Source: Octopus sinensis (Eukaryota). From it: DNA of 64,000 nt. Below are positions 800-41,058 of the stretch, piece after piece. How positions within the stretch are numbered: the first letter of the stretch is position 1; every line of letters starts with the position of its first letter. The translations under genes were made by a program, and so were the position numbers. The DNA is taken from the NCBI RefSeq assembly GCF_006345805.1, contig NC_043015.1, positions 36,828,001 through 36,892,000 of the forward strand, read 5' to 3'. The notes beneath the pieces are model-generated. The model had not been told where the DNA came from. It worked only from the letters and a program-made list of their open reading frames with translations, and made no database searches.

Positions 800-2665
800 C
801 CCTCCTGTGGCCTTCCTACAACAGACAAAACGTTACAAGGATTGCGTCACCCACTTATGGATATACTATCTTTTGGAGAGGCCTACCTAAAGGGTCAGCG
901 TAGAGAATCTGGCGTTGGGTATGCTCTCAAGAATACATTAGTATCCTCCATTGCAGAACTTCCAAGTGGTATACCTGAATGGATCATGTCATGCCGTATT
1001 AAACTGATAATATCTAGTTTTCTTACCGTTGTCAGTATTTATGCACCAACAATGTCCCATTCTGATGAAACTGTAGAAACAGTTTCATGATGATCTAGCA
1101 CAATTATTGAGGAAAGTACCAATTTCTGACAAGCTGGTCATATTGGGAAATTTCAATGCAAGAGTTGTAATGGACTACGTTTCATGGCCTGTTTTAGGTC
1201 GACATGGGAGTGGAAATTGCAATATAAATGGAGTAGCTCTTTTGAAGTTTTGTACTGAGAATAATCTGGTTGTCATCAATACTGTGTTTAAACCACCTGG
1301 AATTTATAAAACCACTTGGATTCTTCATCCTAGATCTAAGCACTGGCATCTCATAGATTATATTCAGATCAGAAAACGTGACATGAAAGACGTTTCTAGC
1401 GTTCGGGCCATGAGAGGAGCAGAGAATTGGAATGAACACCCTTCTAGTGCGTGCAAAAGTAAATTTTTCGATAATGCCTAAAAATCGACTGTCTGGACCT
1501 AGGGTACCCCATATAAAAAAAAACAAAAAAAAAACGATTCCACGATTCTGTGGGAAGTTTTCAAACAAAGGTATTTCAGTCTGCAAGTTTTTCAGTGGGA
1601 TTTAAATCATATACGTCCATTGACTGGTTCTCAGATCAGCAGAAATTCATGATCTACTTTTAGAAAAACAAATCTTAGTCAAAGCACTTTTTCTCAGTCT
1701 TTGAACCCAAACTCAAACGAAGCATACAGAAAGTTGATAGGGCAAATGCAGACTGCTCTAAGAAAAATTAAGCAAGAATGGCGGAATGATATAGAGAAAT
1801 GGGAAAACAAGCAGCTGATAGAAATAATGCCAAGGGTTTGTACTCTGATGTTAAGGAGGTATATGGCCCCAAATCTTCAATAGCTCCAGTGAGAACTGAA
1901 AATGGACGTTTGTTTCTGACTGACACCGCTTCTATTCATATGCGCTGGGTAGAATGTTTTTCTGCACTTTTGATTAGACTATCATCTACTAACATGAGGA
2001 CGATAGAAAACATTGAACACCTAGTTATGGAAGAGATGCCATTTGAACAAAATCTATACGGCATTTATTTCGCTGTGAATAAGCTGAATAACAATCAATT
2101 CCCAGGGTCTGAGGAAATCTGTACAGAAATCTTGAAATATGGGGATGTCAAAATGCTTGAACTCTTAAATATATTAAATTGTCACTGTTGGAGAACTGAG
2201 AATGTGCCTCGAGACTGGATTGATGCCATTTTAGTCTCCTTGTATAAATGGGAGCCAAAGGATATGTGTGGTAATTTTCATGGGATTTCACTTTCGTCTG
2301 TTGTTGGAAAGGTACTTGCCCGCATTTTGTTAGAACGTTTAAATACCTTTATAGTTCCAAATATAGTGTCTGAGTCTCAGTGTGAATTTCGCTCCGCCAG
2401 GGGCGCACCTGAGTGTATCTTTACTGTCAGACAAAAAAAAATGCATTGAACAGACTCTTGCTCTATATCATAGCTTTGTTGATTTGAACAAAGCATTCGA
2501 TACTGTTAATGGAAATGCTCTGTGGCTAATTCTAACGAAAGTAGGTTACCCAGAAAAATTTGGAAACATGATCAGGGTTTTGCATCAGAATATGAAAGCT
2601 AGAGTTAATTTTGGTGGTAGGCTCTCTGAACTTTTTGCCGTGAAAAATGGAGTAAAGCAAGAAGA
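800..2665 (+). mobile_element. Degenerate RTE-clade LINE ORF (APE endonuclease + reverse transcriptase), 3'-truncated at a microsatellite
   Basis: Frameshifted ORF pieces: GQRRESGVGYALKN, LVILGNFNARV...GNCNING, HPRSKHWHLIDYI (APE); PRDWIDAILVSLYK...CGNFHGISLSSVVGKVLARIL, FVDLNKAFDTV, VKNGVKQ (RT). Ends before the YADD motif. Confidence 0.88.
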
Positions 2666-10935: not shown

Positions 10936-12445
10936 TATATATATATATATATATAAAGTACAGGTGGCATGCAAGTGGGTATATATTTAGTTTGAAAGAA
11001 GTTTGAAAATGCCACTATATAAGATATTTGACATGTTTCGGTTCTTCTAGAAAAAAAGAACCTTATCAAAAATATATATTTTTAAAAGATAAGTGTAATA
11101 AAGAAAAGTTCTCACTGCTGCTATTACGGCCAACGGCCACTTCCACTACTACTACGACGACGACAACGACCATCACCACCACCACCACCACAACCACCAC
11201 TACTGCTTCTGCTACTACTACTACTACAGCCAATGAACTGCTGCTACAAAACCAACCACCACTACCACCACGGTCACTACTACTACTGCTATTACAGCTA
11301 ACAATCACTTTCACTACTACAGTCAACGATTCATGCTTCAACGGCTGCCACTTCTTAGTCAACACACAAGACAGCCATTATGTTCCCACGCACAAAACGC
11401 CACCACGTGGACTCTGTTGAAAGTAGCAAGAAATAATTATGAACTTTTCTTTTATTACACTTAAGTTTTAAATATATATATTCTTTGATAAGGTTTGTTT
11501 TTTCAAGAAGAACCGAAAATTTATCGTATATAGTATATATATATACTCTCGGTTGACGATCTGGACCCGGGTGAAGAATTCTCGACGTACAATACCGCGG
11601 ATATCGGGAGAAATGATGGCAGATGTTCTTCTGCTTTTGAATTGGCCGTCTCACTCGAAACATTGCGTACGACCCCTCGCCTCCTCGCCGTAAATTTGCC
11701 GAATTATGCTCAATGTCTCTGTAGCAGACTTGCCAAGTTTAACGCAAATCCTAAGCTGTCTCTTGGTTCCAAGACAAAAATCGTAGACTACATTATACAC
11801 GTGATCCTAAAAACATAGATTTCACAACATGCGAAGTATACACAGCGATATCATTCGGTACACAGCCTCATGAGGATCAATGCTAGCTCCAACTGCGCAC
11901 GTAACCGTCTGCTGCCATCTGTTGGCACACTTCTGAAGTAGTCCGGAAATTTTCGATACTACCTGCTACACCAACTCAGCACGAATTACTATTATTTCTG
12001 TGTTATCTTCTCTAGGTGTATCATCTTGGTGTCTTACTCACTTCGAAATTTAAAGTCCGTTTTGTAACCAAGGTTTAATTCTAAAAATATTCCAGTTTGT
12101 TTTTCTTTACCGTATGGCGGTCTGTGTTATTAACTATTCCACTCTCAATAGCTCGCCTATCAATAATCTAAGCTCTTTGTATTCCATTGGTGATGCATTA
12201 TATAGGCGAGGTGTTGTATATTTTCATCAGGTAATAAGAACCTATGATACTTAATGGATAGGAGGAAAGAAAAGCAAGTTAAAAATGAAAACATATTAAA
12301 GCTTGAAAAAATATACTCTTTATAAAACTACAAACGTGATCAGACTCAAGCTTTTGGACACGTAACGTGAACTATAACATGCACACACAGACACATATAT
12401 ACATACTCAAACATATATATACATATACATGCATACATATATATA

Positions 12446-18569: not shown

Positions 18570-18765
18570 CTTTTCTACTCTAGGCACAAGGCCCGAAATT
18601 TTGGTGAAAGGGACCAAGTATGCAACTGGTACTTAATTCATCGACCCCGAAAGGATGAAAAGCAAAGTCGACCTCGGCGGGATTTGAACTCAGAACGTAA
18701 AGACGGACGAAATGCCGTTTAGTATTATGCTCAGAATGCTTAACGATACTGCCAGCATGCTGCTT
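18570..18765 (-). mobile_element. tRNA-derived SINE (gtcgactttgcc/tttcatcctttcggggtcgat family)
   Basis: B-box gagttcaaatcc on the minus strand; matches copies at 26190, 42190 and 47835. Confidence 0.75.
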
Positions 18766-26189: not shown

Positions 26190-26332
26190 TGCCAATGCGT
26201 AACTGGTACTTATTTATCGACCCCAAAAGGATAAATTTCAAAGTCAACCCCTGCGGCAATTGAACTTAGAATATAAAGACGTACGCCGCTAATCATTTTA
26301 TCCGGTGTGCTAACGATTCTGACAGCTCGCTG
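26190..26332 (-). mobile_element. Degenerate SINE, same family as 18570
   Basis: ctggtacttatttatcgacccc...ctaacgattctgacagctcgc. Confidence 0.65.
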
Positions 26333-38972: not shown

Positions 38973-39379
38973 TTGTTTGGCATCCTCTCTGTCTCGGGAG
39001 ACAATGGAGTTGCGCATTTTTTTTTTCTAGCTCTAGTCCGGCTGTTATATTTTATTTCCTGTTACATTTCTTGCTGTGGCTGTGTAGTCCTATCCTGGAC
39101 AAACACTCCCTCTGGCAGGTACTGCAAATGTAGCGAAGACTGTTCCTGGCTGATTGTAGTGCCATGGTCTCTTGTTTATGTCTCTTCCTTTCTTTCCATT
39201 TCTCCTCTCTCTTTCTGTCACTCCTCTGTATACCCTCTTTTACTGTACGTCGCCATTCTCCACATGGCAGAATCCCCAATGACATACTCTACGGAGAGCT
39301 TGCTAGGGGTACTAGGTCTGTGGGTAGACCGATCTTGCGTTACAAGGATGTTTGCAAAAGGGATATGAAGGCCTGCAAT

Positions 39380-39383: not shown

Positions 39384-39447
<64 letters not shown>

Positions 39448-39678
39448 TAATATATTAATCAATTTAGGGTAGCAAAAAATTCAGTAAAAATTTATCGCTA
39501 CCAGCGGCCTGGTGAAAAAAGAGAAAATAGTCAAAGACTAAATATGTATAAATATAACAATTTAGGAATGGCCTAAACAGGCCATTCGTCCACCAGAAAG
39601 AGAGCAGCCAGAACTCCAACCGCAAAGTAGTGTAATTCGGAAATAAGGTGAAAATTTAAAAACATTTACCCTAATTCA

Positions 39679-39778
39679 TCTTTTATACGATGCATCGTTT
39701 CAGTGTCTTTAATGATAGACCAGCTTAATTAAATTAATTAAGCTAGTCTACCATAGGTCACACTTCATCAGTAAAAGA
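39679..39778 (-). ncRNA. Type I hammerhead ribozyme motif A; predicted GUA cleavage between 39686 and 39685
   Basis: TCTTTTA CTGATGA AGTGT[...]ACACT GAAA CGATGCATCG TA TAAAAGA; stems I, II and III and the core are intact. Confidence 0.85.
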
Positions 39779-40153
39779 AACCTGGGAGAGACGGATACAC
39801 ACGAGCGACTGTATCAATGCCTCGGGATATCTGTCTTAAAATTTTCAAGACCAACGCATTCGCGCAAAACTTATCGGCAGCAAATATAAACTGCCGATTC
39901 AATCTCAGAATTAGTCAGAAAATTTATCAATAATCAATTTAGGGTAGCAAAAAATTCAGTAAACATTTATCGCTACAGCGGCCTGGTGGAAAAAAAAGTA
40001 AAGAGAAAATAGTCAAAGACTAATATGTATAAATATAACATTTAGGAATGGCCTAAAAGGCCATTCGTCCACCAGAAAGAGCAGCCAGAACTCCAACCGC
40101 CAAGTAGTGTAATTCGGAAATAAGGTGAAAATTAAAAACATTTACCCTAATTA

Positions 40154-40250
40154 TCTTTTATACGATGCATCGTTTCAGTGTCTTTATGATAGACCAGCTT
40201 TTAAATTAATTAAGCTAGTCTACCATAGGTCACACTTCATCAGTAAAAGA
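40154..40250 (-). ncRNA. Type I hammerhead ribozyme motif B
   Basis: Same core and stems as A; small indels only in the stem II extension. Confidence 0.83.
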
Positions 40251-40708
40251 AACCTGGGAGAGACGGATACACACGAGGCGACTGTATCAATGCCTCGGGA
40301 ATATCTGTCTTAAAATTTTCAAGACCAACGCATTCGCGCCAAACTTATCGGCAGCAAATAAAACTGCCGATTCAATCTCAGAATTAGTCAGAAAATTATC
40401 AATTAATCAATTTAGGGTAGCAAAAATTCAGTAAAAATTTATCGCTACCGCGGCCTGGTGGAAAAGAGAAAATAGTCAAAGACTAAATATGTATAAATAT
40501 AACAATTTAGGAATGGCCTAAACAGGCCATTCGTCCACCAGAAAGAGCAGCCAGAACTCCAACCGCCAAGTAGTGTAATTCGGAAATAAGGTGAAAATTT
40601 AAAAACATTTACCCTAATTTACCCGAATGCGTTGGTCTTGAAAATTTTAAGACAGATATTCCCGAGGCATTGATACAGTCGCCTCGGTGTATCCGTCTCT
40701 CCCAGGTT

Positions 40709-40807
40709 TCTTTTACTGATGAAGTGTGACCTATGTAGACTAGCTTAATTTAATTTAATTAAGCTGGTCTATCATTAAGACACTGAAACGATGCATCGTA
40801 TAAAAGA
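40709..40807 (+). ncRNA. Type I hammerhead ribozyme motif in the inverted copy; predicted cleavage after 40800
   Basis: tcttttaCTGATGAagtgt...acactGAAAcgatgcatcgTAtaaaaga read directly on the plus strand. Confidence 0.83.
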
Positions 40808-40924
40808 TGAATTAGGGTAAATGTTTTTAAATTTTACCTTACTTCCGAATTACACTACTTGGCGGTTGGGAGTCTGGCTGCTCTTTCTGTGGACGAATGG
40901 CCTGTTTAGGCCATTCCTAAATTG

Positions 40925-40969
<45 letters not shown>

Positions 40970-41006: not shown

Positions 41007-41058
41007 CAATAGGAACATTAATCATACCACCAAAGTGGTATGGTTAATGTTCCTATTG
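41007..41058. repeat. 24-bp stem, 4-nt loop hairpin
   Basis: caataggaacattaatcataccac-caaa-gtggtatggttaatgttcctattg, with one T:G pair. Confidence 0.9.

What the first reader, a model, noticed from the sequence alone, without database searches (positions are those of the whole stretch)
39456..40927. Tandem array of hammerhead ribozymes: a retrozyme-like, circRNA-capable element
Seen: a ~475-bp non-coding unit in tandem. Each complete unit has, on the minus strand, 5'-UCUUUUA CUGAUGA AGUGU..ACACU GAAA CGAUGCAUCG UA^UAAAAGA-3'. This gives a 7-bp stem I, an intact catalytic core, a 5-bp stem II base and a GUA cleavage triplet. Stem III (CGAUGCAUCG) is self-complementary with only a 2-nt loop. 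Established: Penelope pLTR hammerheads and metazoan non-LTR retrozymes are type I hammerheads with palindromic stem III, arranged in tandem, cleaving as dimers and releasing monomers that can circularise. Inference: a read-through transcript would be cut once per unit, releasing a ~475-nt monomer that a PLE/LINE RT copies in trans. I cannot tell whether this family has been described.
Basis: partly seen in the sequence, partly recalled or inferred. Interest (0 to 1): 0.92.

Follow-up and report, generated by a model that had tools for sequence, protein, structure and literature searches.

The report
Tandem hammerhead-ribozyme retrozyme insertion
A 1.5-kb non-coding insertion in an animal genome is made of about 475-bp repeats that each carry a complete self-cleaving hammerhead ribozyme motif; it looks like a new family of an already described class of small parasitic elements ("retrozymes"), and its layout carries the integration signature of Penelope-like retrotransposons.

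Summary
The repeat and the ribozyme motif are real. TRF finds a 472-bp unit, 2.5 copies, at 39454-40619. Three complete type I hammerhead motifs are present: CUGAUGA / GAAAC / GUA^U, a 7-bp helix I, a 5-bp helix II base and a 12-nt palindromic helix III.

The locus is a 5'-truncated inverted copy joined head-to-head to a 2.5-unit direct array, and both outer ends run into (TA)n. Published work describes this architecture and this (TA)n target for Penelope-like element integrations.

All sequence-level criteria for metazoan non-LTR retrozymes that I could test are met: a tandem unit, a complete hammerhead in consecutive units, no coding capacity, 36% GC and a highly paired RNA.

No covariance model detects the motif, neither Rfam nor my own model built from four validated retrozyme ribozymes. 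The likely cause is the 63-nt helix II. Position 10.1-11.1 is A-U rather than the usual G-C.

Cleavage, circular RNA, copy number and the partner element could not be tested, and no related sequence was reachable.

Verdict: a new member of a known kind, of moderate interest.

The parts
39384..39455 (.). (AT)n microsatellite abutting the 3' end of the direct array. Proposed as one half of the (TA)n target and as the primer for first-strand cDNA.
   Evidence: TRF row 39384-39455, period 2. Flank sequence and joined empty site.
39456..39685 (-). 3'-terminal partial unit (unit positions 1-231). It ends in an AU-rich stretch directly at (TA)n.
   Evidence: BLAST map q1-231 = 39686->39456, 92%. Alignment.
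39679..39778 (-). Hammerhead motif c1 (type I). Predicted cleavage lies between 39686 (A17) and 39685 (U1.1).
   Evidence: Regex and descriptor hits. Coordinates verified. Fold.
39686..40160 (-). The only complete monomer bounded by two same-strand cleavage sites. It is 475 nt, 36% GC, and is the candidate linear/circular RNA.
   Evidence: Sense MFE is -139.3 kcal/mol, z = -7.3.
40154..40250 (-). Hammerhead motif c2 (type I). Predicted cleavage lies between 40161 and 40160.
40161..40619 (-). 5'-most direct unit (unit positions 10-472). Its 5' end lies 9 nt downstream of the cleavage-site position.
   Evidence: BLAST q10-472 = 40619->40165, 94.7%. Alignment.
40613..40626 (.). Head-to-head junction between the direct array and the inverted copy. 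It contains a 5-6-nt filler (GGGTAA/TTTACC) that repeats nearby unit sequence.
   Evidence: Alignment of copies and junction sequence.
40618..40925 (+). Inverted, 5'-truncated copy (unit positions about 297-472 followed by 1-125). Its 3' end merges into (TA)n.
   Evidence: BLAST q294-472 = 40618->40796 and q1-139 = 40800->40940 on the plus strand. Inverted-repeat pairs I1-I10.
40709..40807 (+). Hammerhead motif c3 (type I) on the plus strand. Predicted cleavage lies between 40800 and 40801.
40926..40967 (.). (TA)n microsatellite abutting the 3' end of the inverted copy. Proposed as the other half of the target.
   Evidence: TRF row 40926-40967. Joined flanks form one continuous (TA)n.

Best explanation
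The region 39456-40925 is one insertion of a non-autonomous, non-coding retroelement of the metazoan non-LTR retrozyme kind. Its unit is 472-475 nt, and each unit junction encodes a type I hammerhead ribozyme.

Inferred life cycle:
1. A multimeric sense transcript folds hammerheads at each unit junction. They form either singly (4-bp helix III with a UGCA loop) or as double hammerheads through the 12-nt palindrome.
2. The transcript is cut after GUA, releasing about 475-nt monomers with 5'-OH and 2',3'-cyclic phosphate ends.
3. A host tRNA ligase can circularise these monomers. The monomer then refolds into a compact form that hides helix III.
4. A Penelope-like element supplies reverse transcriptase and GIY-YIG endonuclease in trans.

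At this locus the footprint suggests two-sided target-primed reverse transcription in a (TA)n tract.
- One nicked strand primed on an AU-rich stretch at unit position 231 and copied 2.5 units.
- The other strand primed at about position 125 and copied about 0.65 unit in the opposite orientation.
- The two cDNAs were joined head-to-head with a short templated filler.

Shown: the repeat, its map, the motifs, the flanks and the folding energetics.
Inferred: transcription, cleavage, circularisation and the identity of the mobilising enzyme.
For: - Tandem unit and map.
- Three complete motifs satisfy CUGANGA/GAAAY/RUH with helices of 7, 5 and 4-6 bp. They are the only descriptor hits in the window, against 0.005 per shuffled window at laxer settings.
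- None of 47 essential hammerhead columns varies among the three copies, against 36 of 269 other columns (one-sided Fisher p = 0.002).
- Copies differ by only 0.7-1.7% substitutions.
- There is no ORF above 63 aa and no stop-free stretch above 56 aa. There is no PBS or PPT, and GC is 36%.
- The sense monomer folds at -139.3 kcal/mol, z = -7.3.
- The active monomer fold (-40.3) is nearly isoenergetic with the MFE (-41.3). Two domains cofold at -97.3 against 2 x -41.3 through a 12-bp helix III.
- The unconstrained MFE of the 1164-nt array transcript pairs the two palindromes with each other. The monomer and circle MFEs sequester helix III instead.
- Four validated retrozyme ribozymes have the same architecture, with perfectly palindromic helix III. 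Ax353 also has a GUA site and a non-G-C (U.U) 10.1/11.1 pair.
- Published PLE insertions are partial tandems with an adjacent inverted 5'-truncated copy and a (TA)n target bias. Here both outer ends abut (TA)n, and the joined flanks form one continuous tract. (TA)>=8 covers only 2.7% of the window.
- The direct array starts 9 nt from the cleavage position. This fits a template whose 5' end was made by the ribozyme.
- The field's own operational criteria are met: TRF repeat, a descriptor hit in at least 2 consecutive units, and MFE below -5.
Against: - No covariance model recognises the motif. Rfam gives nothing at gathering score or at E<=10, even on 121 nt. My model R1, built from four validated retrozyme hammerheads, scores at most 4.2 bits on a partial alignment.
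- Helix II is 63 nt against about 13 nt in canonical motifs. Position 10.1-11.1 is A-U rather than the highly conserved G-C.
- The loops that would make the helix I-II tertiary contact differ between copies by indels.
- A motif match does not guarantee activity. Only 1 of 9 Xenopus retrozyme dimers cleaved in vitro.
- There is only one locus and three non-independent copies. There is no covariation, no other genomic copy in the window, no relative in any reachable collection and no PLE gene in the window.
- Differences between copies are mostly 1-nt indels. These may be assembly errors, which would weaken the conservation test.
- The 5'-end and (TA)n arguments are post hoc and rest on a single insertion.
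Confidence: 0.78

Rival explanations
1. This is an ordinary minisatellite or satellite DNA. It was amplified and partly inverted by DNA-level processes such as unequal exchange, replication template switching or microhomology-mediated repair. The hammerhead motif is an inherited relic with no present RNA role.
For: - The junction carries a short microhomology or filler, which DNA repair also produces.
- The window is extraordinarily rich in tandem repeats and (TA)n tracts, so adjacency to (TA)n is less surprising than in most genomes.
- No expression data are available, and no second locus was found in 64 kb.
- Covariance models do not recognise the ribozyme.
- Retrozyme arrays are also said to expand locally as satellites.
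Against: - All 13 core nucleotides and all three helices are intact in all three copies, while 13% of other columns vary.
- The substitution divergence of about 1% argues for a recent event.
- Both outward-facing ends are RNA-sense 3' ends at (TA)n and both 5' ends meet in the middle. This geometry is expected from two-sided target-primed reverse transcription and is described for PLEs. It is not the geometry expected from unequal exchange.
Confidence: 0.13
2. This is a heavily 5'-truncated insertion of an autonomous Penelope-like element. On this reading the 472-bp unit is simply its pseudo-LTR / 3' terminal region, not an independent non-autonomous element.
For: - PLE pseudo-LTRs carry type I hammerheads and form tandem/inverted structures.
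- Retrozyme consensus sequences in Xenopus are sister to PLE pLTRs.
Against: - The repeat period is 472-475 bp with units joined end to start and no ORF between them. A tandem of a full PLE would have a period of several kb.
- PLE hammerheads are typically minimal, with no helix III or a 1-2-bp one. This one has a 12-nt palindrome and long helices.
- No RT or GIY-YIG coding sequence adjoins the array.
Confidence: 0.06
3. The motif is a chance match, or the inverted copy is an assembly artefact, for example a palindromic chimeric read.
For: - Differences between copies are dominated by single-base indels, as in uncorrected long-read assemblies.
- Covariance models give no support.
Against: - The expected number of descriptor hits is 0.005 per window, even with helices shorter than those observed.
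- The two arms are not mirror images about the junction. Unit position 10 faces position 297, so this is not a simple fold-back artefact.
- The element sits in the middle of the window with unique flanks.
Confidence: 0.03

Closest known systems
Metazoan non-LTR retrozymes (Cervera & de la Pena 2020, PMC7229834: coral Amil224, mussel Mg353, axolotl Ax331/Ax353; a 278-nt Eurytemora affinis crustacean example is listed in the supplement)
   Same: - Non-coding tandem units of a few hundred bp.
- One type I hammerhead per unit junction, with CUGANGA/GAAAY/RUH.
- A perfectly palindromic A15.1..U16.1 segment.
- Low GC and a highly paired monomer.
- A GUA site and a non-G-C 10.1/11.1 pair, as in Ax353.

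   Different: - The unit of 472-475 nt is above the 170-400 nt reported there, though inside the 51-972 bp range of the 2026 preprint.
- Helix II is 63 nt (5 bp + internal loop + about 20-bp hairpin) instead of 4 bp plus a 5-6-nt loop.
- Helices I and II are each 1 bp longer before their loops.
- The helix III palindrome is 12 nt instead of 6-10.
- There is no sequence similarity to the published units.
- Expression and cleavage are untested here.
Penelope-like elements and their pseudo-LTR hammerheads (Cervera & de la Pena 2014, PMC4209133; Craig et al. 2021, PMC8557442)
   Same: - Type I hammerhead with a palindromic helix III.
- Insertion architecture of a partial tandem plus an adjacent inverted 5'-truncated copy.
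- (TA)n microsatellite target with no discernible target-site duplication.

   Different: - No RT/GIY-YIG ORF is present.
- The period is 472 bp, not kilobases.
- The hammerhead is not of the minimal type.
- The (TA)n bias is documented chiefly for Naiads, which lack canonical hammerheads, and was hypothesised for Neptune.
Classical hammerhead-bearing satellite DNAs: newt satellite 2 (about 330 bp), Schistosoma Sm-alpha, Dolichopoda cave-cricket pDo500 (about 500 bp by name; unit size from my own knowledge)
   Same: - Tandem genomic repeats transcribed into multimers that self-cleave.
- The newt motif works as a double hammerhead through a palindromic helix III.

   Different: - Those are very high-copy satellites. 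Only 2.5 + 0.65 units at one locus are visible here.
- They are now largely regarded as retrozymes themselves.
Plant LTR retrozymes (Cervera et al. 2016, PMC4918200)
   Same: Non-autonomous, hammerhead-bounded, and produce circular RNA.
   Different: Plant elements have type III hammerheads in LTRs, a PBS and PPT, and 4-bp TSDs. None of these is present here.
Rfam Hammerhead families (RF00163 and relatives)
   Same: Same catalytic core and three-helix junction by inspection and by descriptor.
   Different: There is no match at the gathering score or at E<=10, even in a 121-nt search.

Membership tests
Metazoan non-LTR retrozyme | Type I hammerhead with conserved centre CUGANGA / GAAAY / RUH and perfect helix topology (criterion quoted in the supplement of PMC7229834) | tested here: met
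   CUGAUGA / GAAAC / GUA. Helix I is 7 bp (extendable to 14), helix II 5 bp plus extension, helix III 4 bp as a hairpin or 12 bp as a dimer. This holds in all three copies.
Metazoan non-LTR retrozyme | Occurs in short tandem repeats, with at least two consecutive units carrying a complete hammerhead (operational rule of the 2026 preprint) | tested here: met
   TRF period 472, 2.5 copies. Complete motifs at two consecutive junctions on the minus strand. Unit length is above the 150-450 bp of the 2020 paper but within the 51-972 bp of the preprint.
Metazoan non-LTR retrozyme | Non-coding; lacks LTRs, PBS and PPT; GC below 50% | tested here: met
   Longest ORF 63 aa and longest stop-free stretch 56 aa. 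No tRNA-Met PBS and no polypurine run of 10 or more. GC 36%.
Metazoan non-LTR retrozyme | Monomer RNA predicted to be stable and highly self-paired | tested here: met
   MFE -139.3 kcal/mol, z = -7.3 against 100 shuffles. Circular MFE -137.4, 61% of bases paired. The antisense strand is also structured (z = -6.45), so this test discriminates weakly.
Metazoan non-LTR retrozyme | Tertiary loop 1 - loop 2 contacts of canonical type I motifs | tested here: inconclusive
   A bulge lies 7 bp into helix I and an internal loop 5 bp into helix II, so they are geometrically placed to touch. They do not match a known contact motif that I could check, and they vary between copies.
Metazoan non-LTR retrozyme | Self-cleavage of transcripts; linear and circular unit-length RNA in tissues | not testable with these tools
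   No expression data or wet assay available. Only thermodynamic predictions.
Metazoan non-LTR retrozyme | Many dispersed genomic copies, coexisting with autonomous PLEs | not testable with these tools
   Only 64 kb of the genome is available. There is no further copy in it and no PLE ORF. The public collections reachable here held no relative.
Penelope-like element insertion (as integration machinery, not as identity) | 5' truncation, partial tandem, adjacent inverted 5'-truncated copy, microsatellite (TA)n target (PMC8557442) | tested here: met
   Map. Flanks and joined empty site. Literature description.
Penelope-like element (autonomous) | ORF encoding RT plus GIY-YIG endonuclease between pseudo-LTRs | tested here: not met
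   No such ORF in or next to the array.
Rfam Hammerhead_1 (RF00163) and related Rfam hammerhead models | Covariance-model score at or above the gathering threshold | tested here: not met
   No hammerhead match at gathering, nor at E<=10 on 1.8 kb or on 121 nt. My own model from four validated motifs also fails, with at most 4.2 bits.
Plant LTR retrozyme | Type III hammerheads within LTRs, PBS, PPT, 4-bp TSD | tested here: not met
   The motif is type I (helix I open). No LTR, PBS or PPT.

The most novel reading that the evidence does not exclude
The element may represent an uncatalogued retrozyme lineage. Its hammerhead has a 63-nt helix II (a Dicer-substrate-like 20-bp hairpin), an A-U 10.1/11.1 pair and a 12-nt palindrome, which makes it invisible to every covariance model tried. 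Such families would then be systematically under-counted. This single locus may also preserve a readable footprint of how they move. That footprint would be two-sided target-primed reverse transcription of a ribozyme-cut multimeric or circular RNA into a (TA)n tract by a Penelope-like enzyme. The array's 5' end lies 9 nt from the cleavage site, which would be indirect evidence that the ribozyme cut in vivo.
Probability: 0.3. Interest if true: 0.55.

Novelty: new member of a known kind. Interest (0 to 1): 0.4.

Why it matters
Retrozymes are an abundant source of small circular RNAs in animals. How they are mobilised is still only inferred.

If this family is confirmed, it would add three things:
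- A large-unit family, probably crustacean-like, to a class documented mainly in cnidarians, molluscs and amphibians.
- An example of a hammerhead variant that escapes covariance-model annotation.
- A locus whose architecture (inverted 5'-truncated copy, partial tandem, (TA)n target) ties a retrozyme insertion directly to the integration signature of Penelope-like elements.

None of this changes the current picture. It refines it.

Tried and rejected
**Rfam.**
- I searched at gathering score and at E<=10, on 1.8 kb and on 121 nt.
- There was no hammerhead hit. The only hits were weak miRNA-like ones caused by the helix II hairpin.

**My own covariance model R1.**
- I built it from the coral, mussel and two axolotl retrozyme hammerheads.
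- It does not find the array motifs, scoring at most 4.2 bits on a partial alignment.
- I read this as a limit of small models faced with 50 extra nucleotides in helix II and different helix sequences. I could not run the control, a helix-II-trimmed sequence, because only held sequences can be searched.
- R1's best hit, 11024-11075(-), has two core changes and lies in a terminal inverted repeat of another element. I rejected it as an active ribozyme.

**Public DNA scans.**
- Exact and gapped core patterns were scanned in metagenome, viral and prokaryote-genome collections.
- The one hit, L001, is a chance match inside a transposase-like coding sequence.

**Pseudo-ORF searches to reach eukaryotic assemblies.**
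- I ran a protein search with a conceptual translation of the unit.
- I also ran four exact-ORF look-ups, three inside the array and one on a LINE ORF elsewhere in the window.
- All were empty.

**Literature search for the motif letters.** Nothing found.

**Organism identification.** A reverse-transcriptase ORF returned only anonymous metagenome hits. The microsatellite load makes me suspect a decapod crustacean, but that is from memory and untested.

**SINE origin, rejected.** There is no tRNA-like gene, and the sense strand has ten T>=4 runs.

**LINE continuation across the array.** I looked for this to define an empty site and did not find it.
Full report
**What is in the sequence**

The window is animal-type nuclear DNA. 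It is 34% GC, carries a U6 snRNA match of 109.7 bits, and has an exceptional load of microsatellites (149 TRF rows).

At the reported place, TRF finds one long-period repeat: 39454-40619, period 472, 2.5 copies, 93% matches. Direct-repeat families are spaced 466-477 bp apart.

I defined unit position 1 as the first base after the predicted cleavage site and mapped the unit back onto the window by BLAST.
- On the minus strand there are three consecutive pieces:
  - 40619->40165 (positions 10-472)
  - 40161->39690 (positions 1-472)
  - 39686->39456 (positions 1-231)
- On the plus strand there is a fourth piece, 40618->40796 (positions 294-472), continuing at 40800->40940 (positions 1 to about 125).

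No other copy exists in the 64 kb.

One is a 2.5-unit direct array. The other is a 0.65-unit inverted copy joined to it head-to-head at 40618/40619.

The junction carries a 5-6-nt filler (GGGTAA) that repeats nearby unit sequence.

Both outward ends are the 3' ends in RNA sense, and both run straight into (TA)n: 39384-39455 and 40926-40967. Joining the flanks gives one continuous (TA)n tract.

**The ribozyme motif**

| Motif | Coordinates | Strand | Predicted cleavage |
|---|---|---|---|
| c1 | 39778->39679 | minus | 39686 \| 39685 |
| c2 | 40250->40154 | minus | 40161 \| 40160 |
| c3 | 40709->40807 | plus | 40800 \| 40801 |

The motif satisfies the centre rule used by the authors who defined animal retrozymes, CUGANGA / GAAAY / RUH. 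Here it reads CUGAUGA / GAAAC / GUA.

- **Helix I** is 7 bp. It can continue past a 1-2-nt bulge for 4 + 3 more pairs.
- **Helix II** is 5 bp, an internal loop, then a hairpin of about 20 bp, 63 nt in all.
- **Helix III** with its closing A15.1-U16.1 pair is the 12-nt perfect palindrome ACGAUGCAUCGU.

My own descriptor scan of both strands finds only these three sites. Two hundred dinucleotide shuffles give 0.005 hits per window at much laxer helix lengths. Chance is therefore excluded as the origin of the motif, although the three copies are one event, not three.

Across the three copies, 0 of 47 essential columns vary against 36 of 269 others (one-sided Fisher p = 0.002).

The copies differ by only 0.7-1.7% substitutions but by three to five times as many short indels. 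That pattern may partly reflect assembly error. If so, it weakens the conservation argument and suggests the insertion is young.

**Folding**

- For a 131-nt hammerhead domain, the catalytically competent fold (4-bp helix III with a UGCA loop) is -40.3 kcal/mol.
- The minimum-energy fold is -41.3. It instead pairs UGAUG of the core with CAUCG of helix III.
- Two domains together reach -97.3 against -82.6 for two separate monomers, by forming the 12-bp intermolecular helix III.
- In the unconstrained minimum-energy fold of the native 1164-nt array transcript, the two palindromes pair with each other.
- The released 475-nt monomer, linear or circular, hides helix III against an upstream GCGCGAAUGCGUUG segment.

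This is the behaviour proposed for newt and avocado-sunblotch-viroid hammerheads: active in multimers and quiet in the finished monomer.

It is only a thermodynamic prediction. The full double hammerhead is a pseudoknot that these programs cannot score.

Dimer action is not obligatory either. The coral retrozyme ribozyme has a 10-nt palindromic helix III and cleaves at about 0.8 per minute as a single motif.

The whole monomer is strongly structured: -139.3 kcal/mol, z = -7.3. The antisense strand is nearly as structured by z-score, at -6.45.

**What it is**

Every sequence-level property that defines metazoan non-LTR retrozymes and that I could test is met.
- Tandem units of a few hundred bp.
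- A complete type I hammerhead in consecutive units.
- No coding capacity: ORFs are at most 63 aa.
- No LTR, PBS or PPT.
- GC is 36%.
- A highly paired monomer.

These are the criteria of Cervera and de la Pena 2020 and of the 2026 preprint, both of which use descriptor programs rather than covariance models.

The four ribozymes those authors tested experimentally share the perfect palindrome across A15.1..U16.1 (6-10 nt). One of them, axolotl Ax353, also has a GUA site and a non-G-C pair (U.U) at 10.1/11.1. This is a precedent for the A-U pair seen here.

The unit is not a fragment of an autonomous element. The period is 472-475 bp, units are joined end to start, and there is no reverse-transcriptase or endonuclease ORF in or beside the array.

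It is not a tRNA-derived SINE. Ten T-runs in the sense strand make RNA polymerase III transcription unlikely (inference).

**How it probably got here**

Craig et al. 2021 describe Penelope-like element insertions as follows:
- They are strongly 5'-truncated and organised in partial tandems.
- They are biased toward microsatellites, with (TA)n documented for Naiads and hypothesised for Neptune.
- Their target-site duplications are usually unreadable.

The locus reproduces each point.

The geometry has two RNA-sense 3' ends facing outward into the two halves of a (TA)n tract and two 5' ends meeting in the middle with a templated filler. This is what two-sided target-primed reverse transcription would leave.

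Both 3' ends fall in AU-rich stretches of the unit, at positions 231 and about 125, that could anneal to a nicked (TA)n. They do not fall at a fixed terminus. This fits a multimeric or circular template without a defined 3' end.

The direct array begins at unit position 10, only 9 nt from the cleavage position. The chance of landing that close is roughly 12/472. This would fit a template whose 5' end had been made by the ribozyme.

These last points are post hoc readings of one insertion. Perfect (TA)>=8 tracts cover 2.7% of this window, so landing in one is suggestive, not decisive.

**What speaks against it**

- Rfam reports no hammerhead at the gathering score, nor at E<=10 on 1.8 kb or on 121 nt.
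- A model I built from the four validated retrozyme ribozymes reaches at most 4.2 bits on a partial alignment.

I attribute this to the 50 extra nucleotides in helix II and to helix sequences unlike the training set. I could not run the control, so the explanation is an inference.

Other weaknesses:
- The G10.1-C11.1 pair, called highly conserved in canonical motifs, is A-U here.
- The putative loop-loop contact sites differ between copies.
- A correct motif does not ensure activity. Only one of nine Xenopus retrozyme dimers cleaved in vitro.
- I found no second locus, no relative in any reachable collection, no mention of the motif in the literature, and no way to identify the organism.

**Comparison and novelty**

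The kind is known. Retrozyme-like tandem repeats with type I hammerheads have been reported from cnidarians to amphibians. They are explicitly reported in crustaceans and insects, with a 278-nt copepod example.

This family differs in four ways:
- unit length (475 nt)
- the very long helix II
- the A-U 10.1/11.1 pair
- the 12-nt palindrome

I file it as a new member of a known kind. Its two points of modest interest are that it escapes covariance-model annotation and that its single locus displays the Penelope-type integration signature.

**Verdict**

- Observation: partly confirmed. The motif and the repeat are real, but one copy is inverted and the helix III description needed correction.
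- Interpretation: supported at the level of sequence criteria. The functional steps are untested.
- Interest: 0.4.

Noticed in passing
window 42397-42503 (-), with 42290-42400: A U6 snRNA match (109.7 bits) ends without the usual oligo-T terminator. It runs directly into a sequence with a tRNA-like B-box (GAGTTCAAATCCC) that has other copies in the window (18634-18711, 47962-47995, 26213-26269, 43961-44010). It looks like a U6 copy fused to a dispersed SINE-like repeat, possibly a chimeric retrocopy.
   Followed up: partly
window 41007-41058: A unique, near-perfect 24-bp hairpin with a 4-nt loop (-36.9 kcal/mol on the plus strand) lies about 40 bp beyond the right-hand (TA)n of the insertion. 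Rfam gives only weak miRNA-like scores (E 0.14). Its relation to the element, for example as a PLE-type 'tail', is unknown.
   Followed up: partly
window 11024-11075 (-), within 11036-11518: My retrozyme-hammerhead model gives its best window hit here (20.2 bits, E about 0.001). The motif is hammerhead-like with a palindromic ACAUGU helix III but with two essential core changes (C3U, G8A). It sits in one arm of a roughly 35-57-nt terminal inverted repeat flanking a microsatellite-rich core. It is either a decayed ribozyme or chance.
   Followed up: partly
window 39164-39375 (+): The left flank of the insertion is a C-terminal fragment of a LINE-type ORF2 (...GRPILRYKDVCKRDMKA...), cut off at the (TA)n tract. 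Its continuation is not found to the right of the array. Pfam gives no hit for this short piece.
   Followed up: partly
window 1107-2449 (+), 45692-46132 (-), 48413-48808 (+): Decayed mobile-element ORFs. These include an endonuclease-like plus reverse-transcriptase fragment (weak RVT_1, E 4e-4), a transposase-like ORF and another RT C-terminal-like ORF. No Penelope-like RT/GIY-YIG was recognised.
   Followed up: partly
whole window: Microsatellite density is extreme. There are 149 TRF rows in 64 kb and 63 perfect (TA)>=8 tracts covering 2.7% of the sequence, plus many AAT/TAC/AAG arrays. From memory this resembles penaeid shrimp genomes, but the organism was not identified.
   Followed up: no
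window 39456-40925: Copies of the unit differ by 3-5 times more short indel events than substitutions (for example 13 gap events against 3 substitutions between the two longest copies). This is unusual for neutral decay. It suggests long-read assembly errors or slippage during reverse transcription.
   Followed up: no
L001 1328-1405: The only public-collection match to the gapped core pattern lies inside a transposase-like coding sequence of a metagenome contig. It lacks helix I pairing and is a chance hit.
   Followed up: yes
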